This document shows, one piece after another, positions 2,404 to 45,300 of a DNA stretch of 64,000 nucleotides; positions within the stretch are counted from its first letter, which is position 1; each line of letters begins with the position of its first letter. The notes under the pieces are model-generated. The model was not told where the DNA came from and did no database searches. It saw nothing but the letters and a program-made list of their open reading frames with translations. Position numbers and translations under genes: made by a program. The stretch is from Lepidodermella squamata (Eukaryota > Animalia > Gastrotricha). The DNA lies in contig JBLDXI010000015.1 in NCBI GenBank assembly GCA_047495785.1, positions 3,782,001 to 3,846,000 of the forward strand, written 5' to 3'.

Positions 2404-4222
2404 GTAAATTTTTAGAAAATTTGGGGAAAAGTTGACAAACAAAGAAACACGGTTTTACACCTGAGACAGATTACAATTCATATGTGAGCTCCTGATATCA
2501 GATTTCCTCTACATTCCAAATCGAGATTCCTTGCATAATTACGTTGGTTGTTACGTTTTCGTTCTTTCATTGACAATGTTCATCGGAGAGATCGCATCGG
2601 AGTGATGTCAAAATCTCATTATTTTGTTTCAGTGTACTAAACTTCATCTTCCTCGAACCTGTCAATGGTCAATAGTGACTATCGTTTGGCTTCATAGCAA
2701 ATCAGCGGAACACCGACCTCCGTTTTGAGTTTTGAACCCGGATTGGTCAAATGTCACATCGTCATTCGTCACGCAAAATTCGGGTGATCACAATGGAAAA
2801 ATAATTTTCGGATATCTGCAAAATATTGGCACCATATTGGCAAAATGTGTAGAGCGTGAAATTCTGAGTAGAACGAGGTTAGACACTTAGGGTCTCACAA
2901 CTAACGAGTAGGCTGCGGATGGGCTAAAAAGGAAAAAAATGCCTCAGGACCCCCGAAATTGCAATTTTGGGATCTTTTGGTCCGCGGCAAATCACTTCTT
3001 TTCCAAAAATGGATACTCAATTCATCTCTCATCTTTACTGCTCACCGAATCAACCAAAATTTGTTAAAATGAGCGCTTTCTGCTGGCACTGCGCTGGAAT
3101 CTGTCAAAAGTGATATGATCTACTGCGACCAATAAATTGGATTAAACAATAATCAAAATATTTGCCATTGAACCAGTAATCAAAATGTTAGCAAAAAAAT
3201 ATGTATTATATTTTATTCGGCGAAACTAAGGTCAATTGAGCAGATAGTCACGTGGATCTTTAAGTTGTTGAGAAGTAGCTGCGGGCCAAGAGATCTCATA
3301 TGTCTCGACCATCAAGATCTGTCGAGCGGGCGCGACGGAATCTGAAAGGACGAGGTGAGGCGAAAGACGAAGACGAGGTCTCTTTTTCAATTGTTACTCC
3401 TTTTGAGAAGAGCAAAGGTTGATGCTTATTTGTTATTGCGAAATTCCTATTTTTTATTCGACAGCCTAGAAGAATCTGATCACGTATCAAAATGCCACCA
3501 AACTGCATGAAAGTAGTCAAATCGATCTTGAAATGAATGGCCCGCTGAAATCAATTTCGTGCTTTTTTCGTCTCACATTTATTCGTTTCTTATACTGATC
3601 TTTATTCTATCTCTGCACCTGACCTCGGATCTCGGAGGGGTAGGTTCCTAAACGTTTAGCGTTTAAATAGGATAATTTTCGAGGTAAATAGACAGAATAT
3701 GACAATCACGATCGAGAAGGAACGTTTCAGAAGCAGAAATCAGACAACCTTACAGATATTCTCTTTAGAGTACCTTTTTAATTCATGCGGAATGTATCAT
3801 TTTTAGCATGCAATACCTATGTTAGTATGCATTTACCTATGTTAAAAATTGAAAACACAAGGGGACTGTTGTTCGCAATGGGTTTTATTGGTTTTGTATG
3901 TAGCAATTTTGGTAAAATAAGGATGCGCACGGAAAATGTTATCGGCGATATATGAATTCAGGAGGTTTCATAATTGCGTTCGGCCTTCAATTCAACTTAT
4001 AGCTTATAGCTTGAATTAATTGGCTTAATACTATGTTGTTTGAAATTGGTCCCCTTTTTGCATTTGTTGACTAGGTCATTTAGTGTGAAACGGCACGTAC
4101 TGATTGATTCTGTCGACTAATGGAACCTGTTACGTTACCAGAATCATATGCCTGTTTCCCTGTATGTTTCTTGCAAGTCCTCGTAGCTTGTCAACAATTA
4201 ACAGCATTTTATTGCCAATTCA

Positions 4223-5182
4223 GGTTGAGCATTGGCAGAGAATCCGCGACTCAGGTCCCGCAAGGTGCCAAATAATATCAGCCAAGTCCCCGGATCGCTT
4301 TTATTTGAGATTTTTATATGCCGACGATGATCTGGACGAGCTTGCGGCTATTCGCGATGTAATGGACGAATACTTTGAAATGATTGCCCCTGATGGTTCC
4401 ATTCAAGAGCCGAATAAGAAGTTGATCGAAAAGCATCACCTTGTCATGAGTCTGCCCGTTGCTGCTTACATTGAAGCTGAAAATGCTTTTTTCCGCGCCG
4501 TGATCCTTGCCGTTGAAGAGACTCGTTGCAAAGTCTATTTTGTCGACATTGGCGATGAAGACTGGATTGACGTAGAAAACATTTGCTATCTACCCAAATA
4601 TCTCCTGGAGCACGAATGCCTGGCCGTCCAGTGCCGCCTTGTTGGTGTTACGCCACCCGATGGAACGCCGTCGGCTTATCCCGAGGACTGTGGAGTCAAA
4701 ATGTTGCGACTTTCGAATAGCGATGACGTTCAAAAGCTTCGCGAAAATCCTCTGATGTGTAACATCGTCGAGGTAATTAAAGCTGAACCGGTTCAATTTG
4801 ACTCAGGATGGCGGCACCATCGGAAAATGCTCAACCGCCTCGTTGTCGAATTGAATTTGCCAAACAGCGAAAATCCGATGGCAACTCGAAAGAATGGGTT
4901 TGTGATTTCATTATAAAATCCGATTTCATTTGAGGGAACATATCCATTTTCAGATTTGCGCATGTTCTGGCTTCGTTCCACTTGTGCGCTATTGCTCATG
5001 ATGGAATTGATGCCAGTGAATCTAATAAGAAGGTGGAACAGCGAAAGAATCTTCAGCCATCAGCTCCCGTATTTATCCCGTCCTCGCAAGTTTCAATTCC
5101 AAGTTCGAAGCCTCGCGGACGAGGCCGTGGTGCTTTTTCGCATTTGCCCGATAAAGAATGCCCACCTCTACTTTTCGACTGA
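4223..5182 (+). CDS. Extended Tudor-domain protein (TDRD-like), last two exons; 5' end unresolved
   Basis: SPDRFYLR...FFRAVIL...CKVYFVDIGDEDW...AVQCRLVGV is an extended Tudor fold. Intron ~4898-4953 (gtttgt..tttcag). The last exon ends with RGRGRG...LLFD*. Confidence 0.75.
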
Positions 5183-5394
5183 ACGAACATGTTTGTACGC
5201 TGACTATTTCTAGTTCTCAATGACAATTTCCCTGACTGTTCTCTGACTTCAATCTCACGTATTTTTAGTGCGAGATTTTTCATTCTAGTATTATGCCTTG
5301 TTATGCCTTCTCATTGTTGCTCAAATGTACGACAAAGATAATCAAAATTATGCTTCATTTTCATATATTCCATTTAGAAATTATTATTTTCTTA

Positions 5395-7958
5395 ATGGCG
5401 AACAAGTCCTGCTCCAAGAAGAAGACTTCTTCAGAAGTCAAATCCAAACCCAAAACAAAATCGACAAAGAAGTCAACAGCCAAGGACACAAAATCCCGCA
5501 AGCAATCGAAAAAGGTCGTAGATTTGACGAAAACTGTCGATGATCCTAAAGAAGAGTTGAGTTCCGCTGTTAAAAACGAGCCGGAGGAATTCAAATTCGT
5601 AATTGATAAGAAAAACGATGTCTTAATCGAAGCTCCTCTGTACAAACCGATGGCACGAGTTAAGCCTCGGTCAGTTAAAGATGTGCTCGATGGACTGAAA
5701 TGTCACGCGAATCTTATCCCACCAAGTTCTGTTGACATGACCCTGCCAAAAGCTGCGATTGAAAACGCGAAAAAGCGTCAGAAGAGAGAGGCGAGAATGA
5801 AGTTGAAAAGGCTTAAAAGTGGCGCTAGAGTTGATAAAATTCAGCCGACGACTGAAGCTCCGGTTGATCCTTGGAAAGAGCCTGGAAAGAAGCGAAAGCG
5901 ATTGGATATCACTGCCCCGCTATCAGAGGAACCTATCTTCGCTTTACCTCTCAGTTACAATCCCAGCACTGATAGCGAAGCCCTGAGGTTGGCTGTTAAG
6001 GAGGCGGCCAAGGTCCTTACTGAACATGATCGCAAACACGCGAAAATCGAGCGAGTTGCTTCTCAAATCCGGAATGCGAAACCGCTGACTATTCGCGAGC
6101 AGATAGAGGAAATGTCTTCCGGTCTATTTGACGAAGATGCGAAAGAGAGTGAGAAAAAAGGTAGTGATGATGAGACGTATTTAAAGCCGACTGACAAGAA
6201 AGAAGTGAAGAAATTGACGTCGAAAGAGCGGAAGCATCGTAAATCTCAAGAGCGCATTCGTTTATTGGTTCTAAAGCGGAAGACTCAAAATCGTCTGATG
6301 CACGATTTCTACCGCCTTCGACAGATCAAAAACGAGGTTTCGGCTGAGGCAGCTCGCCGCAATGCTTCGCAATCGTTTGATGCGCAAAAGGAGGCGTCTA
6401 GGCGCCGAAAATTGGAGATCTGGCGAAAGATTGTGCTACGTAAAGCGACGATTCAGGCGATAAGGAAGCGCGAAGCAACGGCTCTGATTCAAAAAGCGCC
6501 GTCTGCGGTTATCGGGGATTCGAGTGACATGGGTCTGGAACCTGGAAAGAGCCTACGTTTGATTGAGGTTAGTTTCTCCGAGTCCTTTTCTACGGTTTTG
6601 TTCATTTTCTCTACGGATTTCTCTATCGGATTTTGTCTTCCATATAAAACTCAGCCTTTAATTGAATTTTGTGTCTGAGACCGACTGCAGATATTACTTA
6701 TGTACCAATTATAGTCTGCAAGACAATTAGTGTTAATTGAGCAGTTATACTAGATATTCAATAGAGCCAATACGTCTATTTTGCTCTATTTTTTATTTAG
6801 CACTAAAGATAAGGTTACGGTTTCCTTTAATCAACTTCTCTAAATATATCTTAATAGTTCAAAGAGGCCCGAAATAACGCAATTTATTAAGGCGTGTTGA
6901 GTTTGGGTGACATCAAAATCAAGGGTATATCAATTAATTTCACTGACAATTAAGACAAATTATCGCTGAATGTTGGACAAAATCGAGGCTCTACGTTGGA
7001 TAAATTTGATTTAATCAATAGCCATTATACAATTGCTGATTGATTGTTTGTTATGAAAGTTAAAATAGCCGTATCAAATCATCTCTCAATATAAAATTGT
7101 TGTATGGGGAAAAGAGTTCGTGAATCCCTTTGATGGCAAAACATACTGTCAAAAATGCGACTCAAATAAAAATTGTCGTAATATAATCGAATTTCCACAT
7201 TATATTCGACGTACGTGACTGGTTCGGCTCGGCTCGGCTCGGCTCTACGACAATTAAGCAAAAATGATAAATAACATTTTCTCTGCGCTAAAAATGTCTT
7301 TTCGACCCCGAGTCGGTGGGCCCCTTGAAATATAACTAAGTTGGGCAGTGTCTGTTTTCCGACGGTTTCTGTCAGATCCTCCGTTATTTAACGAAATTGT
7401 ACAATGAGTATGACGAAAGCCTTCCTTTGCCGATTGCCGACCATTTACTAGCGGCCTCAGAACCACAAATGACTGAAAATATCGGAATCAAATTGAAGTA
7501 TTTGAATATAATACAGTGAAAGTTGTGTAAACCGGAGTCTTCCATACCGTACGGATTTTGGTGGCTCTTGTAGAGGCTCATAGAGCAAATTTGGTCGTTT
7601 ACACTGAACTTGTCCTTAACCGGACGGATTTTGCCTGGTGATATCCTACTCCGGTTTACAACATTTTCACTGTATGTATTTCCGATGGTTCCAACGGTTC
7701 AAGTAAAACTGAAAACTGGTTCGAAAGAACAAATAAGTTCGATAATTTCATGTTACTTCCCAATTTTTATATTGCAATTTTAATCAATTTGTTCGTATTT
7801 CCACATTTCAGCCTCGAACGACCAGTCTGGCCTTCGAGAGATTTGTGGCTGCTCAGCGTCGTGGTTTGCTTATCGACTATCGACAAATGGAGCAGAGCCG
7901 ACGTGCTGTTTTCGCTCGCAAGCGGCACGGCTACAAAACCTTCGAGATCAATCGATAA
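5395..7958 (+). CDS. NOP53: Ribosome biogenesis protein NOP53 (GLTSCR2)
   Basis: Exon 5395-6567 (FVIDK, SYNP, basic K/R-rich helices, SLRLIE|gttagt) joins exon 7812-7958 (PRTTSLAFERFVAAQRRGLL...YKTFEINR*), which resembles the NOP53 C-terminus. Confidence 0.75.
7222..7246. repeat. (GGCTC)n microsatellite in the NOP53 intron
   Basis: ggttcggctcggctcggctcggctc. Confidence 0.7.
7514..7672. mobile_element. Tc1/mariner-type MITE (~159 bp) in the NOP53 intron
   Basis: ~25-bp imperfect TIRs CAGTGAAAGTTGTGTAAACCGGAGT / ACTCCGGTTTACAACATTTTCACTG, flanked by TA (7512-13) and TA (7673-74). Confidence 0.8.
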
Positions 7959-8674
7959 GAAAAACTGTAATATGTGTGCAAACGGCTTGTTATTTGATAA
8001 AATAAAGTCACTGTCTGGCCTCGATTTAAAACCTCTTTGGGCTTAGATCGGACACTGTGATTTTCCTTACAACAGTTTCGGGTTTTTTAGCGCAGCAAAC
8101 GTCTATTGTTGGAGAAAACGTATATTGGATTGGGACTTAATGATCAATCAACATATTTCCGAGGGTACATCCTCGTCCAGCTTAATTCATAGTGACAGTC
8201 TTTGACATGAATTGAATGGAATGTTTTCCACAAATTTGGCGATTCCTGCACAAACCTTAATTAAATAGTACAAATCCGGTCAAATCTTTAGACATTCAGG
8301 ACATGTGTCATACCTGGAACTCGTTCAGAGACCTGGGAGGATTCAGTCTAACAATTTAAGACAAGTCAAAAAAGCGTCGACATGAAAAGTTCAAAATTTT
8401 ATTGAATGTACACGTACATTTACGCGCATCACGCACAAGCTTCCTGAGCCGAGACATTTTTTAATCAACTATTCGTCGAGTTTTTTCCAATCGTATAACA
8501 ACAACAGACGTCTGTGCGATAAAACAGCGGATAAACAATAAAATGGTTATTACTATAATATTATTATCATTGCACCAAGAAAAAATTTTCAAGTCGTATC
8601 ACGCCGCATTTTTACATTGAGATGAAGTTGAAAAAAAACCAAAAGTAACAACGCAGTAGGTAATTGAGCTTTTT

Positions 8675-10444
8675 TTAGTCAGTTTCTGCCGCCTCGGTTT
8701 CTTCGATTTTTAAAGCATCGTTCGACGCTTCGTCCTGCTCCTTTTGAAGTTCATCGGCCAGCTCCGAAAATCCGAACTGCTTAGCCAGCGCCATAGCTAT
8801 GGTGTTCTTCTCAGTCTCGTTCGATGACGCATTCGAGTTGTCTTCGACAATGTTGATAACCGGCTGTTCGACGCGCGCATGCTTGACGCCACCAGTCGTG
8901 TTTTCGTCCAGTTTCCGCTTCGTCGACTCGTTTTTCAGTGGCGGCGGTGTGGCGAAAGTTGAGCGTTGCTGTTGCTGCTGCTGACCGGGCAATGGCGACG
9001 TGCCAGTGTGACTGAGCATCGCATCACGAGCCGTTTGCCTCGCCAAATGATACAAGCGCTCGCGGTGGGTGAGTAACACCGGCACCAGGGTGCACAGAGC
9101 GGCTGAGGCTTCGTTGACGCTCAACTCGTGGTACGAAAGGCTGCGATCTGGGTTCTTGCGTTTCGCGTCGAATCGGCCGAAAATCATCGAGAAACGACGG
9201 ACACCTTCGATAAAGCCACTTTGAGATGGCGGCGTCGACAACACAGCCTATAAAAAAAGTATATTATAAAAACTCCACCTTAATGATAATCAGTGCTTAC
9301 CAGAAGTTGCTGAAAGTCGTTCGCCTTCATGCGGGCATTTGAGCAGTCAGTTCGCGGGGTCAGGCTGAGTAGATCGGGGTGTTTCGCGAGCGTTTCAGCC
9401 GCCGCCAAAGCGATAGCACTTCGCATGTCGACTGCAAGCGTAACCGGTTGTTTCGACGCAGCGTTGACCATCAACAGCCCAGTTGCGTTCTCATTGACGT
9501 CTGACGAAAAATTTGTTGAACAGAACGACGACGCCTCGCTGTCGGTGTTGTCGGGGAAGTCACCGCTGTTGCTCGGCGACGTGTTGGCGCCGGAGTGATC
9601 TTCATGCTGGCGTTGAGGTAGAACCGGTAGCTTGTTGTTAGCGAAGTAGACGACTGACGGCGAGCCGGAGGAAGATGACGACGAGGCGGTTGGGTAGGCC
9701 GAGTGGGAGACAAGGCTCAGGTTGATCGGTGCCATAGTTGGGTCGATGGGTGTAGATTTCGAGGCGCTGCTGTGCTGCGACATCATGATCAACGACAGGG
9801 CGGCATCACCGGCGCCGCGAGGTGACACGCTCGATGCGTTTGATTTCGATGCGGACGAGTGAACACCCGTTATCGAGTTGGCAGGAGGAGGTGTGGAAGG
9901 CGGCAGGGCCAGACTAGTCTTCACTGACAATAAAGTAGCGCTTTCCGCCGGCGTCAAAGGAGCGCGAAAAGGAGCTGAAAATAAATAAAAATTAATTAAT
10001 TTAAATCGATTTTTTGCGTGAACCAACAAACCTGGACTATTATGCCATTCAGCTAGCGCTTTTTGAAGACGGCGAATGTGAAGGGGTTTTGAGGTCATGT
10101 CGACAAGACGAAGAATTTCAGCAAATTCCTCCTGGGTTGCTTCGACTAGTTGTTGAACATCATCACCGCCGTTTGACACAAACACATCGTAATAACCGAG
10201 CAGATTAGCGCGTTGTAGCAGGCGGAACAGTTCGACCTCTGAGGCAGAACGGGGCAAGTTACGAATCGCTGGCGACGTCATCATTTTAGGCTGGTTCGAT
10301 TCTTGGGGTGTAGGTGAAGGCGACGATGTCGATAAAGCTGGCGATGACGTGCGAGGTTGCAGGCTGACAGGCTTGTGCTCGTCTTCCTCCAAATCGTCGA
10401 TGTCGAGGTCGTCGTCTTCTTCGGCGCAATAAGCTGACGAAGTG
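8675..10444 (-). CDS. NAB: NGFI-A-binding protein (NAB, EGR co-repressor), NCD1 and NCD2
   Basis: NCD1: ELFRLLQRANLLGYYDVFVSNGGDDVQQL...PLHIRRLQKAL. NCD2: RRFSMIFGRFDAKRK...HELSVNEASAALC...LARQ. Exons 10444-10032, 9974-9301, 9247-8675. Confidence 0.93.
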
Positions 10445-10578
10445 CTGCAAAAGCGACACACATTAATAAAAATGAAAGTAATAATGGGCGTATGAAAAAC
10501 GTTTTGCGAGACTCAAATGCGGACTCTCATTATAACATTATTACTACTCATAAAATTAACACCGCGCGACGCACAAAC

Positions 10579-11369
10579 CTTTTTGCGCCTGAAACCTCCT
10601 CGTATTTAGCATCGCTACTGCTGTGCAAATTATTATCGTCGTCGTCAAAAATAACGACAGAACCTGGCTCCTTCTTCGGCCTTAAATCCAAGGGCGTCGA
10701 GTCGTAACCGGAACCTGCGAATTGACTGCCGTAATTGCCACTTGTCGGCATCATTGACATTGGGAGGAATGAGGCGGGTTTCATTTGACGCATTTTCGGC
10801 AGGCCGGGTAATCGCGGCTTGTGAACATGCGGCTCGCGGCCGACGTAAACGATCCGACCGCCGTTGGTGTGAACCTTTGCGCGGCACGTTCTGTTCGCGC
10901 ATCGCCAATACGTTTTCGATCGATTGTCTGAGATTTTCGAGAAAGAGTAGCCTTCAAAGCGTAGAACGGTGTAACCACGAGAAGTTCTTTCGAAAACAGC
11001 CGGGCCCAGGTCGCAGTAGACGCCTGGCGGGACTGGAGAGATTGAGCGAGGCGTGCCTTGAGCGGTTTGAGTCGGCGTTTGAGGTGTTGTAGGCGCTTGT
11101 TGATTATTTGTTTGAGACTGAGACGGCACGACAGGTGGGGCGACCGGAACTGGTTGCAACGCATTCTGCTGATGAGCGGCGAGTAGTGAGGCGAAAAACG
11201 AGGCGTGCGGCGGTAGGGTGGCGAAAAACGAGGCTGGCAGTGAGAGCGAGTGCGGCAAAAACGGCGACGGGTGATGATTAAGATGGTGGTGATGATGGTG
11301 ATCGGCGGCCGGCGTCGACTGAGGCGATGTGACAATGTTACCAGCAGAAGCGGATGCAACTGCGGTCAT
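10579..11369 (-). CDS. FLYWCH-type zinc-finger exon, probably the first coding exon of the NAB gene
   Basis: TSRGYTVLRFEGYSFSK...TYWRCANRTCRAKVHT...HVH matches the FLYWCH pattern. The phase-2 donor at 10578 matches the phase-2 acceptor at 10445. Confidence 0.75.
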
Positions 11370-13660
11370 TTTTATGAGTTCCCAAAAAAATCAGATAAAA
11401 ATTGAGGCTAAATGATGATGATGATTTAAATCGAGGCAAATGACATATTGAACAAGGGTAAAACTGAGTGGCATATTCGACGCGCGACGGTACATAGAGC
11501 CGCGTGATCGGAAAATAATAGGCATGGAAAAACTCTCTAATATCGGATGATTGATTACGATTAAAACTCTCGATAAAATAGACTTGTCAAATCTAAAGTA
11601 TATATTAATTTGGGTAATCTACTAGCGACAATTTTTTCTTCTAAGCGTCGCGCGTCCAACTGAGCATGACTGCGCACTCGACAAGCCTACGCAAGCTCTA
11701 CCCATCTATTTTGACTAATCAAAATCACCAAATTCAATTGCTAATATTGAAGAACGGATCGACATTGTATTAACAAAGTTCAAAAGCGACTTGTCAGGGG
11801 AAAAACTTGTCAACTGTTCGTGGGACTTTTTTGACACCTAAGGTACTAAGCATGTAAATCGACGCATTTGACACGGCGCGAGAGCGCGGTCACACTTGAC
11901 TGGATAATATATTTAATTTAATTCGCCCCGTTGTCGATGTAATAAGAACATCCAGGACAAGTCGGTGGGTTGCTAAAAATTGAAAACAGTAACTGTCACT
12001 GTGAGAGATTTCAGTGAAACTGCAAGTGCGAGGCGCTGTCTCACGCCGGCATTTCGCAGGCAGCAGCAGTATAGGAAGGTACGTGCGATTTGGGAAATAG
12101 CTGTTAAGAGCGTGAACGCGCATTTGACAAAAGTTTGTGGTGAATTCAAAAGATAGCGCGAACAATGGGCACCGGTGGGTTCGATTACGCGGACGCGAGA
12201 CGCTCGCAGGTGCTGCGCTTTGCCGTAAAGCGTTGCGCAACGCGAGCCGGGTCGAGCGACGCGCTTTTGGCCGCTCTGTGGCGGTGCGCGTTGCTCAACT
12301 ACAAAGAGGCGTCGTATAGGAATGACAACTGCAGCAACGTATACGGTGGGCAAAAACGCGCAGACACGGCGGCGCGAGTGATTTGATGGCAGCAGGATGA
12401 TCCGTATCGCGGCCATGCGCGAGTGCTGCGAGACGACGTTGACGCGTCGAAAAGTTCGACCCGTGCGGTAACCGACCGTACGGTATAAATGTGCGAATTC
12501 GTCATAGTCGCCGGCTCGAAAAGCGGCTTGCGCAAGACGCGACGAGTAATTACACTCCTTTTGTTCCGTCCTCTCAATTATTGCCCAACGGCAATATAAA
12601 TTACCTATACGATGTGTATGTGTCGTAGCCACTTTTTAACTCAGAGAGCGCGAGAGAGTCCGCATTTCTCAGGTGTTATTTACCAAAAATCGTAACTATA
12701 TTACGGCCTAATTTAGCAGACGGGTATTACCTACCTGTCGCGTTCACCAGACGCTGACGTTGACCACACGGGTAACAGTGGCCCTGAGAAAATTTCATTA
12801 GCAATGTTGCCCAGATTCACTATAAATGGACATTAAAACTTACAGATAGATGTCCTAAGACGATTCAGATTAAAATCGACAACGTATATGTCGTCACTGG
12901 ATACGCCGATTTTATTCGAATTAAGCGCTGATTCCTATAGAATGGTATAAAAAAATCATTAGCAATTATTTGAGCAATTAATTATCAATATGGGCAAAAT
13001 CGGAAGCTTCTGATCATTATGATCATTGATGACAGAGTCCGTTATGGGTAGAAAATTAATCAAAATTAAATTTGATTAATTTTCTTAAAAAGTTAATTAA
13101 GTTAATTAAGTTAAAAATTAGAAAATTAATCTGCGGAATAATAGTTGGTTGCTATTGCATTCTTTTATTTTTATAATTAACTTGAGGCATTTACATGATT
13201 TTTTTCTAACAGCAACGAATACAGGGTCAGTAAAGCACGTAGAACCTTGTACAACGCTTGTAGTTTTTAAAGGGCATAATAATTTAAAATTCTACTGTGA
13301 GACCTGGATATAACAAGGTTTGGTTCTAATAAAGCATTGGCGGTCAGTGAGTAGCTAATCAATGTCTTTTACGATTTTTTATTCGGTGAAGAGTCGGGTA
13401 ACAAAATTATGGCTAAATCGACGGCCTGAAAAATCCATCTTAATCTACAGCAAACCGAATTTTTATCGCATTTTTGAATTTTCATTCCTGAAAATATTAT
13501 TTCAATTAGTTGCGTCAGTTGAAAAACTTGAGCCCACGTATAGAGGGGATGGCGAACGCAATAATTCGTAATAACAATATACACACAGAGTGTACAACAC
13601 TCGCCTCGCCTCGCCTGATAAAAAAAAAGGAGAAGAAGAGGAAGAAAGTGCTCAGCGAGT

Positions 13661-14321
13661 TGCGTGGGCTTTTCTTTCGAGGCGTAGGCGTCGCAGCACA
13701 CATTTAGTACGAACGTAAAGCAGTGCTCATAGCCGCTGCTCGTTTGATTTTCGCCAAAGTAGCAATAATAATAAAGCCGTCAGTGCTTGGCGAGCGCGCA
13801 AAAAACACGCTCCGAATTAGCGCAGCTCTGAAAAAAAATCAACGAAGAACAAAAAACGTGAATTTAATAAAGAAAAAAACTGTGCACATGTGTGGGGGAA
13901 GAAATGAGCAGAAGCCAGCGGGCTCTTTACGACGTGGGCGGGGATATATCGGCGAGAAGTTTTTCGCTCAGGAAAACTCGTCCAGGGGCCGCGCGTGGCC
14001 GGAGGTTTTACAGCGCTGCATTACCCGGCCTGTAGTCGTCGCCGCCCGCGTAATGTTTAGAAATAAACCAGGCTCTTTCTTGTCACATATCAGCTGAAAA
14101 ATGAGCCACCCTCCTGTCTGAAACTGAAATTAATGTGATGTGTGTGATAATAATAATAAATGTAAGCCTCGCGAGCCGATATAGTACAGGACCGAGGTGC
14201 AGCGGGGTCTGCTCTTGCTCTCTCGTGTGCTGCAGCCCAGCCACCGCCGCCGACGCCCCCGCAACTGCCAGCCTCCTCGCTCGCTCAGTCAGTGAGCAAA
14301 TAAAATTGGCTCGCCCCCGCA
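13661..14321. promoter_or_regulatory. Cluster of EGR (Zif268/Krox)-type binding sites upstream of NAB
   Basis: CGCCCCCGCA at 14254-14263 and 14312-14321; GCGTAGGCG at 13682-13690; near matches TGCGTGGGCT (13661) and ACGTGGGCG (13932). Confidence 0.6.
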
Positions 14322-15616
14322 CTCCAAGCCTTGTGTTGTTATAATGTAATCATAGAACGGACGCGCGTCGCCCTCCTCCCCTCTGTTTTTTTCCACTGCG
14401 GGCAAAATCGAACAGTTTTCCATTCGTGCACCCACTCTCCGGAAACAGACACGACGTAAAAATCAGAGCGCGTTTTTTTGTCAATACAAACCGGCAATAT
14501 TTAACGATGAAAAATCGAAAATGGCGACACACATTATCGTGTTGACAATTTTATTGCATGACATTTCGGCTGAAATTGTTACATATTAAGGCGTTTTTTT
14601 AACGTGTCCCTAAAGTCACGACACGACAAGCTATTTTATCAGCGAAAGCATCATTTTTTCTGAATCATGAATTCAACAGTGAGAAGCGAGTCTATCCGAC
14701 TTATCACACTTGATGATGTGTTTAACCACCGGAGCAGCAATAGTTGTTTGACAGGCAAGCAGTTTACACGATTTCACCCCTAAAAACAGAAAAATATTCA
14801 ATGTAATAATTAATATTCCATCATAAGTGAGCAATTCTTTTCCGCGAATTTACGACCGAAATTAGCAGGCTACACCAGAATATATTATAAGGAGGAACAA
14901 AAAGGTCGAAAAAATAAATTAAGGGCAGGTCGAAATATCAGGCAGATGCCTTCTAGTGCGAACTCGTGTGATCGCTCATTCGTTTCAACAGAATATCGAC
15001 GGGTTGAACTTGGAGCGAAATTACCCAGCTTAAAGAAGGGTGTGAATTTTTGTCTGGCACTTGTCACCTTTAGTCAGCCATATGCCTTATTTTGTCCGAC
15101 AGCCCAAAAATTGACTTGAAAGAAGACAATAAAATTGACTCAAAGCTAAGTTTTAGTGAATTTTAGCAGATAAATCAGGAGGGCCTCCGTGACCGTAAAT
15201 ATTAACTAATAGATACATAAGTCGATTTTGTATCAACATCTGATAGCATCGTCGGTTTAGCACGTGAGAAAAAATGATTGGCAAACCTCTATCTAATCTT
15301 AGCTGAATCCATCCAATTCCAAGTAAAACTTTCAGGCTGTTGGATGAATGAGACATACTTAATTATGTCTGACCTCTTAAAGGAGCAGCTATTGTAATTT
15401 ACTCTAATTTTTTATAAGCAGAATCCAAGAAAATGAGGCCCAATTCCTAATATATTTTCAGACTTTTCCGATGTTCAAAAAATAAAAGGCAGGACCTCAA
15501 TCTAAGGCCTTCACATTGCCTATATTTTATGGTAATAAAAAAGTTTTTTCATGGTTGAAAAGCCCATACAAATCTCCATTTTTTATATATCGCTTGCTGA
15601 ATTTGTTTCGAAGAAC

Positions 15617-16807
15617 TCACTTGCGGATGTGCTCGGCGACAGTCCAGTCAGTCTTGAGCGGGATCGATTGCTTGATCTGAACTCCAGCCGACGTGATAAT
15701 TGCAATATCATACTGAAATTTGGAAGAAAATAGATAAAAATTAGGATTGACACAAAGCGAATTAAGAAATCCTCCGACAATGAAAAAATAAGCCTAACTA
15801 ATTGTTCCGAGTTCGAAATGTTTGACATTCACGGTTTATAAATCAATTCGCAAAATTGACGGATATTGACAAGATTTACGTCTGTGGAGGCAATTATCTC
15901 GTAACGCATCGAGATAATCGAGATTCGATCTTTGACATAATGCAGTAATTTGCGTGAGCAATGGCCCCAAATAACATGGGATGACTTGAAAAACAAGTTA
16001 ATTCCTCAAATATACGAGCGATGAAAGGATTTCCTAAAAATGTTGCGTCAAAAGACTGCTCTACGCTTTCATTTGTAAATTATAGAGTCCATCCTAGAAC
16101 CTAAAGTGAAATAAAATGTAACTAACCTTGTCGTAAGAGCGAGCATCGCGGTAGAAAAGAACGCGTTGGCATTCATCCAGCAACTTCTCGGCTCCAGCCT
16201 GGTCGAGCTTATCAGTCTTCTCCAAAGCCGAGCGCATGATCGGCTGAGCCATGTAGGCGCCAAGGCCGGTCGCAATCGACGGAGCCTCGTACGCAATACC
16301 GAGCAGGTCGACGTAGCCGAGGAAGGGCACAGTGCCGCCTTCTTCCATTCCAGCGACGACCAGGCGGTTCCAGAACGGCTCGAACTTGCTACGGGCGTTG
16401 TACATAACGCGGGTTAGCCACGAGTAGACAGCGCGAGGCGACAGCTGCACGCCGTCATTCTCGCAGTAGTCGTCGACGATCATTTGCTGGATGTGGCGGT
16501 TCAGGTACTGGAAATCGGCGATTTCACCTGACGCAGCAATCACAACTCGGTCATTGACCTTGATAATGCGGTGAATGTTGCGAAACTTGGCCAGAGAGCC
16601 GTAAGAAACCAAGGTATCAGCAGCCAGGGCGACACCACCGTCGAATTTGACCCCCAAAACTGAGGTACCAGTCGTAATGGGCGAGCTAAAAGAGTTATTG
16701 AGGTTAAAAAATCAAGCTCGTGACCTCAATTTTTACCTCATATGGGTATGGGGCTCAGCCTTGGCATGAACGGGAGCATCGAAAACAGTAGCCGGGGTAG
16801 ATAGCAT
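15617..16807 (-). CDS. PSMB4: Proteasome subunit beta type-4 (beta7)
   Basis: Three exons (16807-16737, 16685-16128, 15712-15617): SPITTGTSVLGVKFDGGV...SYGSLAKF...IATGLGAYMAQP...VLFYRDARS...TDWTVAE. Confidence 0.95.
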
Positions 16808-16857
16808 TGTTAAATTTAATATCTATCACAGCAATTTCAAGGTAAAATTAAGATCAT

Positions 16858-17508
16858 TTAATATAATTTAGCTCCCGGCAAAACTTGTTCCTCCCTATCA
16901 ACGCCCAACGAAAAAAACGAACCGTCTTCCGGCTCAACAAATAACGGAATATTTTCTTTCGGATTAAAAGCTATCAACGAGCCTTGAAGATTCTCGTGAT
17001 CTTTGAAAATAAAAGATAGCGTAGTTGAACAAGTTTGCCCATCGCCAAGATCAACCGTCAAATTGCAACCGCCATCTTCAGTTCGCTTGATTTCCAATAC
17101 TTTAACGCAGCATATTCCACCTTCTTCGAAATCGTGGAAAGTTATCTCAGGGCTGCTCAGATCTTCATCAGAATGACGGAAACCGATTCGAAGTCCATTT
17201 TCGAATTTATTCCCGCGGGTGTTCATAAGATTCACACGCGATTCAATATTCGGAAAACCAACGGTAAGGAACTCGGACATAAAGCCTGCAATGTTCTTCT
17301 TCGGGAAGTTGCAAACTGCGATGACTTGTTTTCCAACCAATTCATCAATATTAGGATAGGTTAGTGGTAGCTGAGCAGATGTTTTCCGCAAACCAAATTT
17401 ACCGAAGTCAACATGAATCTTATAGGAAGGATTCCTCGCTCTGGGGAAAGGTTCCGCTTTCACAATAGTTCCGATTCGAAGTTCAATTTTTCTTAAAATT
17501 ACCGACAT
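16858..17508 (-). CDS. csaA: CsaA/Trbp111-like OB-fold chaperone with two tandem domains, bacterial type, intronless
   Basis: ELRIGTIVKAEPFPRARNP...DFG...TSAQ...GKQVIAVCNFPKKNIAGFMSE...NGLRIG matches prokaryotic CsaA. A second, degenerate unit runs EITFHDF...PGAKLY. Confidence 0.85.
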   Translation of the reverse strand: MSVILRKIELRIGTIVKAEPFPRARNPSYKIHVDFGKFGLRKTSAQLPLTYPNIDELVGKQVIAVCNFPKKNIAGFMSEFLTVGFPNIESRVNLMNTRGNKFENGLRIGFRHSDEDLSSPEITFHDFEEGGICCVKVLEIKRTEDGGCNLTVDLGDGQTCSTTLSFIFKDHENLQGSLIAFNPKENIPLFVEPEDGSFFSLGVDREEQVLPGAKLY

Positions 17509-17592
17509 TAGTAAAATCTAAGATGAATACAAGTATAAATTACAAAAAACTAGAATCACTTTTATTTAATAAATAAAGGCAACATTTCGGTA

Positions 17593-18147
17593 TTATCTGC
17601 CATCGAGTGAACGCTCACGTGCAATGACTGCATCCTCGAACGTTACTTGATAAGCCGTGCCTTCGTGAATGATAGCTTCAACCTTAGCTGGGAAGCCAGC
17701 CACCGTAAGGAAACCTTGTATGATCCCAGCGGCAAAAGCAGAGCAGTTGAGACCACCTTGATCTTTCGGTGTAGAAATGAATCGGCATAGAGCTGAATCA
17801 TGCTCGTGTAAATAGTACACATTGTCAACGTTAGAGGCTTTCTGCAAAGAATCCAGCTCACGCCCAAACAAATGGCGCCATAGATTCGATTTGACGAATA
17901 ACAGAATGTTATTGACGCGAACGTCTCTCTTTGAGCCCTTTTCCTGCATGTACAAAACGTCGACCAACCTTTGTCCGACTTCAGCGCCAACAGCTGCTAA
18001 TTGATCGTGGAAATCAGTTGCAGTTTTCGCGTTGTTATGGGTATATTTGACGATTTCCGAAAAGAGCAACGCGAAAGAATGCAAATTGACATCAAGTTTC
18101 CCCTTTGATATAGGAAAATCTTGAACTGAAAATGGCTTTCGAAGCAT
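17593..18147 (-). CDS. TRAPPC5: TRAPP complex subunit 5 (Trs31)
   Basis: VNLHSFALLFSEIVKY...LWRHLFG...FISTPKDQGGLNCSAFAAGII...GFPAKV...VIARE; single exon. Confidence 0.93.
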   Translation of the reverse strand: MLRKPFSVQDFPISKGKLDVNLHSFALLFSEIVKYTHNNAKTATDFHDQLAAVGAEVGQRLVDVLYMQEKGSKRDVRVNNILLFVKSNLWRHLFGRELDSLQKASNVDNVYYLHEHDSALCRFISTPKDQGGLNCSAFAAGIIQGFLTVAGFPAKVEAIIHEGTAYQVTFEDAVIARERSLDGR

Positions 18148-19431
18148 TATCAACGCGTAATAATAAAAATCTAAGCCAGAAACAGCATTATGATATTACG
18201 TACTATGTGCAGCAATCATAACTCCCGAAAAGCTTGATGAAAAAAGCAGCTTCCCTTATCAATATTCGAAAGCTCTATTCATCTAATATCTAATATGCAA
18301 CATGCAATAGCGGAGAAATGAGCATCAACTTAACACCATCAGCATCAAATCATAAGGGAAACAGCAGCCTGATCAATAGGTTAATCCCTAAACATTAATC
18401 ATCGCAAATCTAGCTGTGTAATTAGATTGATCATGCAGCCAGAACGCTAGGTGGAGTAGAGTAGGTAGAGTCGGTTAATGTGACATGTTATATTTAATGT
18501 TTGCAAAGCTAGATGAAGTTCATTTAATACATTTTCTAAATTGATCTGAATATGCTTCCAACCCTGAACCCTGAATTTCTGGTATCGCACTTCATAATCC
18601 CTCAGCTCGCAGAGCCGAGCCTGTTCATCATTCATCACTGTCAAGCGTCAAGCCTGACAACTGACAAGAGTCCAGCGATACCTTAACCCTGAAGCGATCT
18701 GCGAGCTGATAAATAATATGCCGTTTGACGCCAGTTACGCTGGCCACCCGTTGGCAATGCCATCCTTAAAAACATCAGGTAAGGCACATCCAAATAAGTA
18801 GAGATACGGAGTAACTCGGTACCACGCTGGCTCCGCGCTCCGCTCCTTTCTTGGAACCACTAGCAGGTAAGTTCCTTCTTACTTACGAACTGGAAGCTGG
18901 AAGTCCCAGGTTCTAAGTTCTAGGCCTTGGGTGCATGTGCACAGCATCGAAAGATGACAAACAGCTGGCAAGATGACGGACACGACGAGAGTCGACGACG
19001 AATTATTACGCGCGCAAATTCTCAAAATATCAACTTAATTGATCGACTATAAAGTCAATTGTATAAAACTTATTAAAACATGATGTTAAATGTTATTTCA
19101 TAAAAGTATATGCAACGTTGCTATGGAGACGCGCGGCTACTTTTTCAAACTCGGAGGTCGTCCCACTTGAAAAGACACAGCTGATTTCATTGACTTACTC
19201 GCAGCGAACTTCCAGAGCTGAAGACATGCGCAAATCAATTATTAAGCAGTCGAATAAGTCTTATTGCAAGATTACTCTCAGTCGCATTGAATCAGACGAA
19301 ATTTCTCCTTCCATTCCATAAACAAAACGTTTAGCCCAAATGCTTCCGATTTATAATCAATCAGTCGTCCAATGCTTTTCTCCTGATTACTACAGTCTAG
19401 TTATTATTGTCTGTAATTTTCAAGTTTCCCC

Positions 19432-42399: not shown

Positions 42400-45300
42400 T
42401 CAGCTGACGGGACATTCGACATAATCGGTACCGGCAATTGTAGGCACCGAAAACGCATATAGGGCTGAAAAATAGAAAATTAAAATTCCACCTTAAAATT
42501 TATTTGCTTTACTCACCTGCTCTCGATAGGTATGTCAGAGTGCCGAAACGACCAGATGGGGCCGAATCGTAGAAATAAGCGCAAATGCCGGCTGGTCCGT
42601 GGCAAATCGGCGACGATTCGCGATTCGTTCGACGGCGGTAGTTGCTGCCGAAGTTAGCGCAACAAGACTTTGCCGCGCCGCCTTCAATCGCGCTCTGTTC
42701 CTCCAGGAACAAATCATTCGCAGCCGCTATGACACGATCAACATGAATTGTGCCGTGGAACATGATCAAACCATGGTCGTTTTCGGATAACGTCGCCAGA
42801 CTCGATAGAGCCTCGACGAAAAGTTGACGGTAGTTCGGGTCAGGCACACGATTTAAGGCGGCTTCAACGTGCAACGCAAATTTCAGTTCGTGTTGCGTCA
42901 TTTCTCGAGTTAGAGAAGACGGAATATGTCTATCGAAGACTACTATACCCTCGCAACGTTCCAACAACCGCCAAACACTGGCGTAAAATCCGATCGGGAC
43001 TCGATTAAGGGAGCCGTCAAGACGCCGCCGCCGGAACCATTGGCCATGGCGGTAGACTTCGCCAACGTCCATTTCTTCCTCGGATTGGCCGTCCTTCCCG
43101 TCGTCTGTTGATGCGTTGCTGAGCGTGCGTTCAAAGGCGAAAACTGAGGGTAGGCGATCGCCACTCCTGTCGACGCCCTTATCCGGGCCCGGGCTGTTCG
43201 CCTGTGAGAAACTGTGTTCGCCCGCCAGTTCTTTCGCGAAATGAGACGCCTGGCGCGCGAAGGAACGTTTCGAAGCGCGACTAGTCACCATTTGGCCGAC
43301 GGACATGCTCGACGCGGCGCGCATGCTCTTGTCGCTCGGGGCCAGTTCGGAGCCGGACAGCACTCGAGATAGCAGGGTTTTCATTTGAAACGGACTCAGG
43401 TTGAACAGGTGCTCGGTCGCCTCCTCAGGCGTACACGACATCATAGCACCCAGCTCGCTAGCCATGACCTAAAAAATTACGTTGTTAATAAAACGAAAAG
43501 AAGGAAAGGGAATATTTAAATAGAACCACATTTTATATCCGATAAAAAATTTGACCGCTAACAATTAAAAAACGATAATTTTTCGAATTTTTCGAATTTC
43601 CTAGAAAAGCGCAAGTGTTTGGCTTGAAAATGAGCGATTCTTAGCTTTCCCCAAGCCATGAACAAATTGTTCAAGTAAATATTAAAATTTCCAGTTTTAG
43701 ACCGTTGGGATGTTCCAATCCTCCTTAAACAGAGAAAATCATTATTTAGCCGATAAGTCCAACTGTTTCAGATTGATGCGAAGCAACTAGCATAACTATT
43801 GGAACTTATGAATATCTAGTGAAATTTCTCACATCAGAATAAGAACTTCAAATAAAATCGACTGAGACCTAAAAATAGCTAAATATTTGAAAGGTGAGGC
43901 TATGTTCAGCATCAGTTGATAATTCATCAACTGATGCTGAAAATGGAAACTTTTTAGGGCGGTTTTTTAATTTCAATTCGCGCTCTTTAGCTTAGAAGCC
44001 CATTTTCACCCATAGCAAGGCTGATGGTTAATAGCTTCGTTTTGATATCGACTCAATTCAAGTTTATTGAAACCTTGAAATTGCTTCAAACTTTTTCATT
44101 CAATTATTTTCGACCGAAAAAAAGATAAAATAGGATCCTAAAAATGAAAATTACCTGTGTAATAAGACCGATGCGAATGCGCAACATGTTGCTGAAAAGC
44201 CGAGGTTCGCTCTTCATAAGCATCGAAAGGTCGACTATCAATTCTTGGGTGATAACCGTCAATGTCGGATCGCCATTGCAAGTCGATCGAATCAACGCCT
44301 CGAGTTCATCCGGCGGTAACGGGGTGGTCACTACTTTTTCGCTGGGTTCAGGTGGTAGACCGATTGTCACCTGTTTTCCGCGGACCAATACGTCGGTTAG
44401 ACATTTGGCGAGGTCATCGGGGCGACGGCGCAATACCCCGGCGGCGTGACGAACCAGCCACCACTCGCGGGTCTCCGACGCGCGGTCACCCAGTTCAGCG
44501 ACCAGGTCTTTGACCGGGCAGCCAAACGGCGTCGGCCAGTCGAGACCTTTGGCCAGGTACAAACAATGAATCAAATCGGCTTGTTCGTGAAGATTGCTCG
44601 TTTCACGCAGAGATTCAATCAGCTCATTGATATCACTTTGCAACGCGAGTTGGATGGCTCCGATCGAACTGGGTGACGGGTGCATGGTGACTAACAGATT
44701 CGACGGGCGGGCTCGAGGGGTTGTAGCCAGTGGCGAATTAGCTATGTCGGAACAACTCGCCGACACCACCATACCGCCTTGGGGTGAGCAGGAAGACGGC
44801 CTGGCTAATCGCTGCATAGGCACCCCGCCATGATGCTCGACCGTACTGATAAACTCATCCAAACTCAATTCGGTCAGGGGCACAAATGCGGCTATCGACG
44901 GGTCTAGGGTGGTATTGATGTTGTCTTTTCTTGAATTCGGGGTCGTTCGGTCGTTGTCACCGGGTAAGAACTCGGCCGATGCCGGGCGCAAATTCGGCGT
45001 TGGGTACACAGATTGGCGCCGCTTTGACACGATACCAGCGACGCGTTTCGCCGTCATCGACATGCGCCGGCCCACATCGCGAATCGAATGCTCGGTATCA
45101 TTCAACTTGCTGTCATCCTGAGACTCGGCAACAATCGACGACAGCCTAGCAACAGGGTGGTGGGATGAGTGCAGCTGAATGAAGCGATCTAGCGACTGCT
45201 TCGAAAAGTGCTCAGAATGCTCGAGGAAGGACAAACGCGTCACGCAGGACGTTGAAATGAACTGCTTCAGGGTACCAACTTGCACCCGATGACCGCCGAT

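What the first reader, a model, noticed from the sequence alone, without database searches (positions are those of the whole stretch)
8675..11369. Apparent FLYWCH zinc finger-NAB fusion: an EGR co-repressor that may have gained its own binding module
Seen: a FLYWCH exon (11369-10579) has a phase-2 donor (AAAAG|GTTTGT). It joins in frame across a 134-bp intron to the phase-2 acceptor TTTGCAG|C at 10445/10444, then runs through an acidic/Ser-rich linker into NAB NCD1. The exon also carries PLDLR (PxDLS-like CtBP motif), and PINLS lies between NCD1 and NCD2. Known: NAB1/2, Drosophila Nab and C. elegans MAB-10 have only NCD1 and NCD2, do not bind DNA and are recruited by EGR-family factors; FLYWCH domains bind DNA or proteins. 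Inference: a lineage-specific chimeric repressor able to target chromatin independently of EGR. The internal MMTSP start just before NCD1 could still yield a classical NAB isoform.
Basis: partly seen in the sequence, partly recalled or inferred. Interest (0 to 1): 0.8.

Follow-up and report, generated by a model that had tools for sequence, protein, structure and literature searches.

The report
FLYWCH zinc finger NAB fusion gene
In an unidentified small animal genome, the gene for the NAB transcriptional co-repressor appears to have gained an upstream exon encoding a FLYWCH zinc finger; one other species shares this layout, no NAB protein in public databases that I inspected has it, and no RNA evidence yet confirms it.

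Summary
On the minus strand, four exons (11369-10579, 10444-10032, 9974-9301, 9247-8675) splice into an 816-aa ORF with no internal stop. It carries FLYWCH (Pfam 1.1e-10), NCD1 (5e-35) and NCD2 (6.4e-24).

The only relative found is "species B", known from ENA metagenome contigs. It has the orthologous locus in conserved six-gene synteny and the same layout:
- a phase-2 GT donor after the FLYWCH exon;
- a 76/77-nt intron;
- an in-frame, ATG-free linker leading into MMTSP and NCD1.

In both species the linker has coding-like codon usage in the NAB frame only, and the intron and read-through tail look non-coding. The FLYWCH domain is the best conserved part of the protein (90% identity, against 76% for NCD1).

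No FLYWCH+NCD1 protein appeared among about 270 NAB-family proteins inspected.

The main rival is a two-gene reading. Neighbouring genes are spaced like operon cistrons (44-84 nt), so FLYWCH and NAB could be separate cistrons with NAB starting at the conserved MMTSP. Species B argues against this, because its read-through ORF has no stop before the acceptor.

No transcript data were reachable and the organism is unidentified. My verdict is a probable (~0.6) new variant of NAB. Its function is inferred only.

The parts
10579..11369 (-). Exon 1 (aa 1-263 plus 2 nt). It holds the conserved start MTAVAS, an SFF..LPP..SFFASL motif, the FLYWCH domain, PLDLRP and an acidic tail. It ends at the phase-2 donor AAAAG|GTTTGT.
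   Evidence: In-frame codon-usage score is +0.18, against -0.11 and -0.34 off frame. It aligns with the species B ORF P0087.
10821..10994 (-). FLYWCH zinc-finger domain (aa 126-183). The zinc ligands are C157, C162, H181 and H183. The domain carries 14 K+R against 5 D+E.
   Evidence: Pfam PF04500, 1.1e-10, full profile length. PDB 2RPR (human FLYWCH1) at 8e-7, with the C/C/H/H ligands aligned. Foldseek top hit is 2RPR, probability 1.0, E 0.02, on a low-confidence model. It is 90% identical to species B.
10677..10694 (-). PLDLRP, a PxDLS-like short motif and candidate CtBP-binding site.
   Evidence: It is identical in species B within a stretch that is otherwise 37% identical. Binding was not tested.
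10445..10578 (-). Putative intron 1 (134 nt, GTTTGT...TTTTGCAG). It contains the read-through stop at 10548-10550 and an AATAAT just after that stop.
   Evidence: Codon-usage score is negative in all frames (-0.17 to -0.65). The read-through tail RFVRRAVLIL scores -0.59. The species B counterpart is 76/77 nt, cannot be aligned, and carries the only polymorphism seen in 1.4 kb, a 1-nt T indel.
10285..10444 (-). Acidic and Ser/Thr/Pro-rich linker at the start of exon 2 (aa 264-317). It has no ATG.
   Evidence: The NAB frame scores +0.27 bits per codon, against a coding mean of 0.22 +/- 0.11. The other frames score -0.05 and -0.52. Only 1.1% of windows from other regions reach this score. In species B the linker scores +0.33, against -0.41 and -0.44. 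Sequence similarity between the two species is not above composition.
10270..10284 (-). MMTSP, a conserved internal Met-Met at the position where ordinary NABs start. It is a possible start of a 499-aa classical NAB isoform.
   Evidence: MMTSP is identical in species B. In most NAB representatives NCD1 begins at residues 1-10.
10033..10254 (-). NCD1 (SAM-like, EGR-binding and multimerisation domain of NAB).
   Evidence: Pfam PF04904, 5e-35. It is 76% identical to species B and about 65% identical to vertebrate NAB2.
9975..10031 (-). Intron 2 (57 nt, GTTTGT...TTTTCAG, phase 1, no in-frame stop).
   Evidence: Species B has a 60-nt intron at the same position and phase, and the sequences are not conserved.
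9301..9974 (-). Exon 3. It holds the inter-domain region with APINLS (9715-9729), a poly-Ser-GSP stretch, and the first part of NCD2.
   Evidence: The P[LIV]NLS motif is shared with chelicerate NABs.
9248..9300 (-). Intron 3 (53 nt, GTAAGC...TTTATAG, phase 0). It is absent in species B.
8675..9247 (-). Exon 4. It holds the rest of NCD2 (9005-9241), the conserved C-terminal motif LAKQFGFSELADE (8750-8788), and the TAA stop at 8675-8677.
   Evidence: Pfam PF04905, 6.4e-24, profile positions 43-120 of 125.

Best explanation
This is one transcription unit that encodes an 816-aa chimeric co-repressor.

Gene structure. A promoter upstream of 11369 drives a pre-mRNA. A 134-nt cis-intron is removed from it, which joins a FLYWCH zinc-finger exon in frame to an otherwise ordinary NAB (NCD1, a PxNLS motif, NCD2, and a C-terminal QFGFSE motif).

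Function (inferred). NCD1 still binds EGR-type factors and multimerises, and NCD2 represses. The very basic, highly conserved FLYWCH domain adds a second way to reach targets, either by direct DNA binding as in C. elegans FLH-1 or by binding a partner protein as in Mod(mdg4). The conserved PLDLRP motif may add CtBP recruitment.

Origin (inferred). A FLYWCH gene and NAB were adjacent cistrons. When the upstream ORF gained a donor, the NAB 5' acceptor became a cis-acceptor. The retained MMTSP start may still give a NAB-only isoform.

What is shown: the domains, the splice signals, conservation of phase and frame in two species, coding-like linkers, and absence of this architecture among the inspected NABs.

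What is inferred: that the splice is actually used, and every functional statement.
For: 1. The splice model gives an uninterrupted 816-aa ORF with three Pfam domains.

2. Species B has the orthologous locus (contigs L001-L005). The order TRAPP, proteasome, FLYWCH, NAB, Nop53 (opposite strand), TUDOR (opposite strand) matches the window.

3. Exon 1 in species B is 812 nt, so the donor is also phase 2 (GAAAG|GTTCTT). A 76-nt intron ends in TATAG, and the join runs in frame into MMTSP. The other two frames have stops in the species B linker.

4. Neither linker contains an ATG, yet both score like coding sequence in the NAB frame only (+0.27 and +0.33 bits per codon). Both introns and both read-through tails score as non-coding.

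5. The read-through tails are unrelated between species (RFVRRAVLIL against RFFIFKLFKNF...). In species B a 1-nt indel inside the intron changes the read-through ORF from 295 to 324 aa. It is the only difference in 1.4 kb.

6. In species B the read-through ORF has no stop before the acceptor. An upstream mRNA that ended before the acceptor would therefore be a non-stop mRNA.

7. The FLYWCH domain is 90% identical between species, against 76% for NCD1 and 28-46% elsewhere. It is under strong constraint.

8. There are 1.7-4.7 kb of upstream space before the FLYWCH ATG. Only 100-263 nt separate the FLYWCH ORF from MMTSP.
Against: - There is no RNA evidence of any kind. The only Logan contig (L006) is genomic.
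- Only one comparison species was found, so conservation of phase rests on n=2.
- In the window all three frames are open in the linker.
- Linker similarity between the species is not above composition (p about 0.12-0.5).
- The genome has operon-like spacing next door.
- In the window, an AATAAT follows the read-through stop and a TTTTGCAG lies about 95 nt further on. This looks like a nematode-type intercistronic region.
- MMTSP is conserved and lies at the usual NAB N-terminus.
- The donor GTTTGT is far from GTAAGT, although intron 2 of the same gene uses the same hexamer.
Confidence: 0.62

Rival explanations
1. These are two separate genes, possibly two cistrons of one operon. A 273-aa FLYWCH protein ends at the stop at 10548. 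A 499-aa classical NAB is translated from MMTSP, on an mRNA whose 5' end is made by spliced-leader trans-splicing at 10444 or closer to the ATG. The in-frame relation is coincidence.
For: - Neighbouring same-strand genes are only 84, 50 and 44 nt apart, with a YAG 9-15 nt before each ATG. Polycistronic transcription is therefore likely in this lineage.
- MMTSP is conserved and sits where NABs normally start.
- The window has AATAAT 5 nt after the read-through stop and an acceptor about 95 nt later.
- Linker similarity is not above composition.
Against: - In species B the read-through ORF has no stop before the acceptor, and the intron has no A[AT]TAAA.
- The read-through tails are not conserved, score as non-coding, and shift frame with a within-species indel.
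- The linkers score as coding in the NAB frame in both species and lack any ATG.
- The acceptor lies 100-160 nt before MMTSP, against 9-15 nt in the three operon-like spacers.
- The phase-2 donor is conserved although the exon and intron lengths differ.
Confidence: 0.2
2. Both products exist, but the separate ones dominate. The fused mRNA is a minor read-through or cis-splice by-product of an operon, and the FLYWCH and NAB proteins mostly act on their own.
For: The evidence is the same operon context and conserved MMTSP as above. From my own knowledge, chimeric read-through transcripts between neighbouring genes are common in animals.
Against: A by-product would not keep the frame, the phase and coding-like codon usage in the linker across species that are only 28-46% identical outside the domains. 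In species B a stand-alone FLYWCH protein would carry 25-54 junk residues that differ between alleles.
Confidence: 0.13
3. The FLYWCH ORF is a decaying relic derived from a transposon. It happens to lie upstream of NAB and is not part of any functional product.
For: FLYWCH domains derive from Mutator-like transposases, as stated in PMC12265568. Exon 1 is largely low-complexity outside the domain.
Against: The domain is 90% identical between two distant species, with intact C-C-H-H ligands. Start MTAVAS, the SFF motifs and PLDLRP are all conserved. The same orthologous position is kept in conserved synteny.
Confidence: 0.02

Closest known systems
NAB family co-repressors (vertebrate NAB1/NAB2, Drosophila Nab, C. 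elegans MAB-10)
   Same: NCD1 comes before NCD2, both well above Pfam thresholds. NCD1 is about 65% identical to vertebrate NAB2. A P[LIV]NLS motif between the domains is shared with chelicerate NABs. An internal Met sits at the usual NAB start. NABs act as cofactors of EGR/LIN-29 factors (PMC10584935).
   Different: Ordinary NABs start at NCD1, at residues 1-10 in most representatives, and carry no zinc finger. Here 317 residues precede NCD1, including a FLYWCH domain. There is no Nab1 C-terminal domain (PF04902). No FLYWCH was found in about 270 inspected family members.
FLYWCH zinc-finger proteins (human FLYWCH1, PDB 2RPR; C. elegans FLH-1/2/3 and PEB-1)
   Same: The Pfam match covers the full profile and the C-x4-C...H-x-H ligands align with 2RPR. 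The domain is basic, as expected of one that binds nucleic acid. FLH-1 binds promoters and represses transcription (PMC12265568).
   Different: There is a single FLYWCH domain, whereas FLYWCH1 has five. It is placed N-terminal to a co-repressor scaffold. No close stand-alone orthologue was found other than the species B ORF.
Drosophila Mod(mdg4) isoforms (BTB cofactor plus isoform-specific C-terminal FLYWCH)
   Same: The design is the same: a cofactor scaffold that does not bind DNA is given a FLYWCH module that helps recruit it to particular chromatin sites (PMC5666082).
   Different: The scaffold is BTB, not NAB. The FLYWCH domain is C-terminal and joined by alternative or trans-splicing of 3' exons. 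Its mechanism there is protein-protein and still unclear.
NAB2-STAT6 fusion of solitary fibrous tumour
   Same: The NAB scaffold is fused to a module of another transcription factor, which changes what NAB does at EGR targets (abstracts listed, e.g. PMC8305824).
   Different: That fusion is a somatic, pathological inversion. NAB2 is the N-terminal partner and gains an activation domain. Here the fusion is germ-line and conserved, and it adds an N-terminal zinc finger.
Lingula anatina predicted isoform X4 (P0126): NCD1 + HTH_psq + HTH_Tnp_Tc5
   Same: It is another case in which NCD1 is joined to a transposase-derived DNA-binding module in a predicted protein.
   Different: The DNA-binding fold is different and C-terminal, and it replaces most of NCD2. 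It is a computational isoform and may be a transposon captured in an intron.

Membership tests
NAB (NGFI-A-binding) co-repressors | NCD1 domain (PF04904) above the gathering score | tested here: met
   119.8 bits against a cut-off of 24.3, E 5e-35, profile positions 2-75 of 79
NAB (NGFI-A-binding) co-repressors | NCD2 domain (PF04905) C-terminal to NCD1 | tested here: met
   84.8 bits against a cut-off of 25, E 6.4e-24, on exon 4 alone (profile positions 43-120 of 125). The first part lies at the end of exon 3, across intron 3.
NAB (NGFI-A-binding) co-repressors | Binds the R1 domain of EGR-type factors through NCD1 and represses their targets | not testable with these tools
   Inferred only, from 65-76% NCD1 identity to characterised NABs. 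No EGR gene lies in the window. The C2H2 gene at 61586-63532 is EVI1/PRDM16-like.
FLYWCH zinc-finger domain family | PF04500 match above the gathering score over the whole profile | tested here: met
   41.9 bits against a cut-off of 23.6, profile positions 1-62 of 62
FLYWCH zinc-finger domain family | Zinc ligands (Cys, Cys, His, His) and the YW.C core are present | tested here: met
   TYWRC157...C162...H181-V-H183 aligns with the ligands of FLYWCH1 (2RPR). These residues are identical in species B.
FLYWCH zinc-finger domain family | WRKY/GCM1-like all-beta fold | tested here: inconclusive
   The AF2 model was built from a 2-sequence alignment. Residues 121-178 have pLDDT 58-70 and form six strands. 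Foldseek's top hit is 2RPR (probability 1.0, E 0.02, TM-score normalised to target length 0.55). The rest of the model has low confidence.
FLYWCH zinc-finger domain family | Sequence-specific DNA binding or partner binding | not testable with these tools
   Only the net charge is known: 14 K+R against 5 D+E in 69 residues.
CtBP-recruiting repressors (PxDLS motif) | A P-x-D/N-L-S/T/R type motif in a disordered region, conserved in orthologues | tested here: met
   PLDLRP and APINLS are both identical in species B, inside poorly conserved stretches. I recalled the motif definition from ELM. It was not checked here.
CtBP-recruiting repressors (PxDLS motif) | Physical binding to CtBP | not testable with these tools
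   The search turned up no paper linking NAB2 and CtBP.
Operon cistron pair resolved by spliced-leader trans-splicing (the rival filing) | The upstream cistron has its own stop and poly(A) signal before the downstream acceptor | tested here: not met
   In the window there is a stop at 10548 and a weak AATAAT. In species B there is no stop before the acceptor (the T7 allele stops at the acceptor's own TAG, the T8 allele runs on) and no A[AT]TAAA in the 76 nt.
Operon cistron pair resolved by spliced-leader trans-splicing (the rival filing) | Spliced-leader RNA, or SL-capped mRNAs, in this organism | not testable with these tools
   No Rfam SL family lies in the window and no transcript data could be reached. 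Operon-like 44-84-nt spacers are seen next door.

The most novel reading that the evidence does not exclude
The FLYWCH-NAB protein is the major product. It arose when an operon's intercistronic region was converted into a cis-intron. That change turned an EGR-dependent cofactor into a repressor that finds DNA sites through its own zinc finger. Read as a "Rosetta stone" fusion, it also predicts that separate FLYWCH factors and NAB cooperate in other animals. For example, FLH-1/2 and MAB-10/LIN-29 both act in C. elegans developmental timing (PMC12265568, PMC10584935).
Probability: 0.15. Interest if true: 0.7.

Novelty: new variant of a known kind. Interest (0 to 1): 0.5.

Why it matters
NAB proteins are the textbook case of a co-repressor that has no DNA contact of its own and depends on EGR-type factors to reach its targets. 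A conserved natural fusion to a zinc finger would matter for four reasons:
- It would show how such a cofactor can gain its own targeting.
- It would be a germ-line counterpart to the oncogenic NAB2-STAT6 fusion.
- It would give a testable hint that FLYWCH factors and NAB work together elsewhere.
- If the operon origin holds, it would be a clean example of two cistrons merging through conversion of a trans-splice acceptor into a cis-acceptor.

If the two ORFs turn out to be separate cistrons, the finding reduces to a conserved FLYWCH-NAB gene pair. That is ordinary.

Tried and rejected
- **More species.** Two scans of JGI metagenome contigs (peptide patterns, then a degenerate YWRCxxRxCRAKVH DNA pattern) and one scan of GTDB genome contigs found nothing.
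- **Organism identity.** Exact look-ups of 11 window ORFs found nothing in the 15-billion-protein collection. A paper search for the sample names was empty. The organism stays unidentified.
- **Stand-alone FLYWCH orthologues.** A search in the 145-460 aa range returned only the species B ORF.
- **Linker conservation.** A shuffle test showed that linker similarity is not above composition, so I dropped it as evidence.
- **Within-species variation.** L001, L003, L004 and L005 are about 99-100% identical, so no dN/dS-type test was possible.
- **EGR partner in the window.** The C2H2 gene at 61586-63532 is EVI1/PRDM16/hamlet-like, not EGR.
- **FLYWCH next to NAB in compact mite genomes.** None was found in Sarcoptes, Dermatophagoides or Dinothrombium by annotation or by tblastn. 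A weak hit in L009 was chance. The Tetranychus protein was not on record.
- **Structure.** AF2 on a 2-sequence alignment gave mean pLDDT 46. Only the FLYWCH core was usable.
- **Whole fused protein.** I could not submit the 816-aa spliced protein as one query, because it has no stop-free reference. Fused proteins in the databases were therefore sought only indirectly. Ranks beyond 150 and beyond 120 of 1253 were not inspected.
Full report
**What is in the sequence**

- An ATG at 11369, preceded by an in-frame TGA eight codons upstream, opens a 791-nt exon. It ends in AAAAG|GTTTGT after base 10579, with two bases of a codon left over.
- The next 134 nt (10578-10445) end in TTTTGCAG.
- Joining 10579 to 10444 gives an AGC (Ser) codon. 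The frame then continues through an acidic and Ser/Thr/Pro-rich stretch to MMTSP (10284-10270) and beyond.
- Two more short introns (57 nt and 53 nt) complete an 816-aa ORF that ends at TAA, 8677-8675.
- Pfam finds FLYWCH in exon 1 (41.9 bits, full profile), NCD1 in exon 2 (119.8 bits) and NCD2 in exon 4 (84.8 bits).
- The FLYWCH region matches the solved human FLYWCH1 domain 2RPR, with the four zinc ligands aligned. A low-confidence AF2 model has 2RPR as its only meaningful structural hit.
- PLDLRP (10694-10677) and PINLS (9729-9715) are present.

**A second species**

The NAB part finds one close relative, P0001 (41% identity). Everything else is generic NAB at about 65% identity in NCD1. 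P0001 lies on ENA metagenome contigs. There, a 295-aa FLYWCH ORF (P0087) sits directly upstream on the same strand.

Four assemblies and a genomic Logan contig carry this locus. They are nearly identical to one another, so they count as one species, "species B".

Gene order is shared between the two species: TRAPP, proteasome subunit, FLYWCH, NAB, then Nop53 and a Tudor gene on the opposite strand. The loci are therefore orthologous. Adjacency cannot be an assembly artefact, because it appears in several independent assemblies.

**Is it one gene?**

In species B, exon 1 is 812 nt. Its donor (GAAAG|GTTCTT) is therefore also phase 2. The gap is 76 nt, ends in TATAG, and the join again runs in frame into MMTSP. 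Here the other two frames contain stops. The spliced species B model is 704 aa.

I trained a codon-usage score on Pfam-supported ORFs of each genome.

| Segment | Window | Species B |
|---|---|---|
| Linker, NAB frame | +0.27 bits/codon | +0.33 |
| Linker, other two frames | -0.05, -0.52 | -0.41, -0.44 |
| Mean of true coding windows | 0.22 +/- 0.11 | 0.33 +/- 0.17 |
| Intron 1, all frames | -0.17 to -0.65 | -0.32 to -0.50 |
| Read-through tail | -0.59 | -0.42 |

Only 1.1% of windows from other parts of the 64-kb window reach the linker's score. Neither linker contains an ATG, so if it is translated, translation must start in the FLYWCH exon.

The read-through tails are unrelated between the species. 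The only polymorphism in 1.4 kb of species B is a 1-nt T indel inside the gap. It changes the read-through ORF from 295 to 324 aa. That is tolerable in an intron and awkward in a coding tail.

The FLYWCH domain is the most conserved segment of the whole protein: 90% identity, against 76% for NCD1 and 28-46% elsewhere.

**The evidence is limited**

- In the window, all three frames are open across the linker. ORF continuity there proves little.
- The similarity between the two linkers is no better than shuffled composition.
- There are only two species.
- No transcript could be reached. Searches that would have caught partial fused proteins of 145-667 aa found none.

**The main rival**

The genes just upstream are packed like operon cistrons.
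- In the window, TRAPP, a tRNA-binding-domain gene and the proteasome subunit are separated by 84 and 50 nt.
- In species B, TRAPP and the proteasome subunit are 44 nt apart.
- Each spacer has a YAG 9-15 nt before the next ATG.

FLYWCH and NAB might therefore be two cistrons. NAB would be trans-spliced and translated from the conserved MMTSP, which lies exactly where ordinary NABs begin. The window even shows AATAAT just after the read-through stop, with TTTTGCAG about 95 nt later.

Three points argue against this.
- In species B the read-through ORF has no stop before the acceptor, and the gap has no poly(A) signal.
- The acceptor lies 100-160 nt before MMTSP, rather than 9-15 nt.
- Codon usage says the linker is translated.

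I put the fused gene at about 0.62, strictly separate genes at 0.20, and a mostly-separate mixture at 0.13. The operon context suggests how the fusion could have arisen, by conversion of a trans-splice acceptor into a cis-acceptor. It also shows how a NAB-only isoform could persist.

**How unusual is the architecture?**

- A HMMER search of 1.84 billion cluster representatives with the NCD1 exon gave 490 hits.
- None of the 150 best contains anything like the FLYWCH exon by phmmer or by a W.C...C...H.H pattern.
- I ran Pfam on the 32 longest or most N-terminally extended hits, and again on the 10 with the longest extensions. Neither run found FLYWCH.
- A region search over NABs of 310-987 aa returned 1253 proteins. 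The 120 listed carry only NCD1, NCD2 or Nab1 domains.
- NAB loci of three mites have no FLYWCH upstream.
- No paper links FLYWCH and NAB.
- Lower-ranked hits were not seen, so absence is not proven.
- Other NCD1 combinations do exist: a Lingula isoform with Tc5/psq DNA-binding domains, and NACHT-ankyrin giants with several NCD1-like domains.

**Likely function (inferred)**

NABs are cofactors that act with EGR/LIN-29 factors (PMC10584935). FLYWCH domains bind promoters and repress in C. elegans (PMC12265568). In Drosophila Mod(mdg4) they help recruit a cofactor that does not itself bind DNA (PMC5666082).

The domain here is strongly basic, 14 K+R against 5 D+E. It is followed by a very acidic tract with 19 D+E in 54 residues. 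The simplest reading is a NAB that keeps EGR binding and NCD2 repression, and has a second tether of its own to DNA or to a partner.

PLDLRP is conserved and may bind CtBP. PINLS is also conserved, but it is an older NAB feature shared with spiders, horseshoe crabs and a mite.

**Verdict**

- The fusion is probable but unproven.
- The function is inferred.
- It is a new variant of the NAB family, not a new kind of system.
- Interest is moderate (0.5).

Noticed in passing
window 16094-18153 (minus strand); L003 290-1611: Spacing here looks operon-like. The TRAPP ORF, a tRNA-binding-domain ORF and a proteasome subunit follow each other with 84-nt and 50-nt spacers. In species B, TRAPP and the proteasome subunit are 44 nt apart. 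Each spacer has a YAG 9-15 nt before the next ATG, which suggests spliced-leader trans-splicing in this lineage. No SL RNA family was found in the window.
   Followed up: partly
window 4104-18153 compared with L003 290-8509: Six-gene microsynteny is conserved between two species that are only 28-46% identical outside the conserved domains. The order is TRAPP, proteasome, FLYWCH, NAB, Nop53 (opposite strand), Tudor (opposite strand). The window has an extra tRNA_bind gene and a 4.7-kb gap before the FLYWCH exon.
   Followed up: partly
window 61586-63532 (minus strand): This is a 648-aa single-ORF C2H2 protein in a GC-rich stretch (56%). From memory, its three C-terminal fingers ([35 protein letters not shown]) look like the EVI1/PRDM16/hamlet type. 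They are not EGR-like.
   Followed up: partly
window 42509-47174 and 48206-51596 (minus strand): Two tandem genes carry Glyco_hydro_15 halves, and in the first there is also a phosphorylase b kinase C-terminal domain. They look like adjacent phosphorylase-kinase alpha/beta-type paralogues.
   Followed up: no
L001 9883-9889 compared with L005 (alignment A3, column 935): The only difference in 1.4 kb between two species B assemblies is a T7/T8 length change in the polypyrimidine tract of the putative intron. It changes the called FLYWCH ORF from 295 to 324 aa.
   Followed up: yes
proteins P0126, P0088, P0089, P0091, P0161: NCD1 occurs in other combinations. A Lingula anatina predicted isoform has NCD1 + HTH_psq + Tc5 transposase DNA-binding domain. 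Proteins of 1200-2800 aa have two to four NCD1-like SAM domains plus NACHT/AAA and ankyrin repeats.
   Followed up: partly
window 9715-9729; proteins P0104, P0237, P0244 and others: The AP[ILV]NLS motif between NCD1 and NCD2 is shared with spider, horseshoe-crab and Dinothrombium NABs. Among the stored sequences it does not appear in any other NAB. It may be an unrecognised conserved short motif of NAB.
   Followed up: partly
window 8750-8788 and 11184-11231: Two further short islands are conserved between the species and have no known function. One is the C-terminal LAKQFGFSE[LI]ADE. The other is an N-terminal repeat, SFFxxLPP..SFFASL. A His6 run at 11283-11300 is present only in the window species.
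   Followed up: no
window 10281-10463: All three minus-strand frames are open across the acidic/Ser-rich linker, because of its GA/GC-rich repetitive composition. An ORF-based gene caller could therefore start NAB in the wrong place here.
   Followed up: yes
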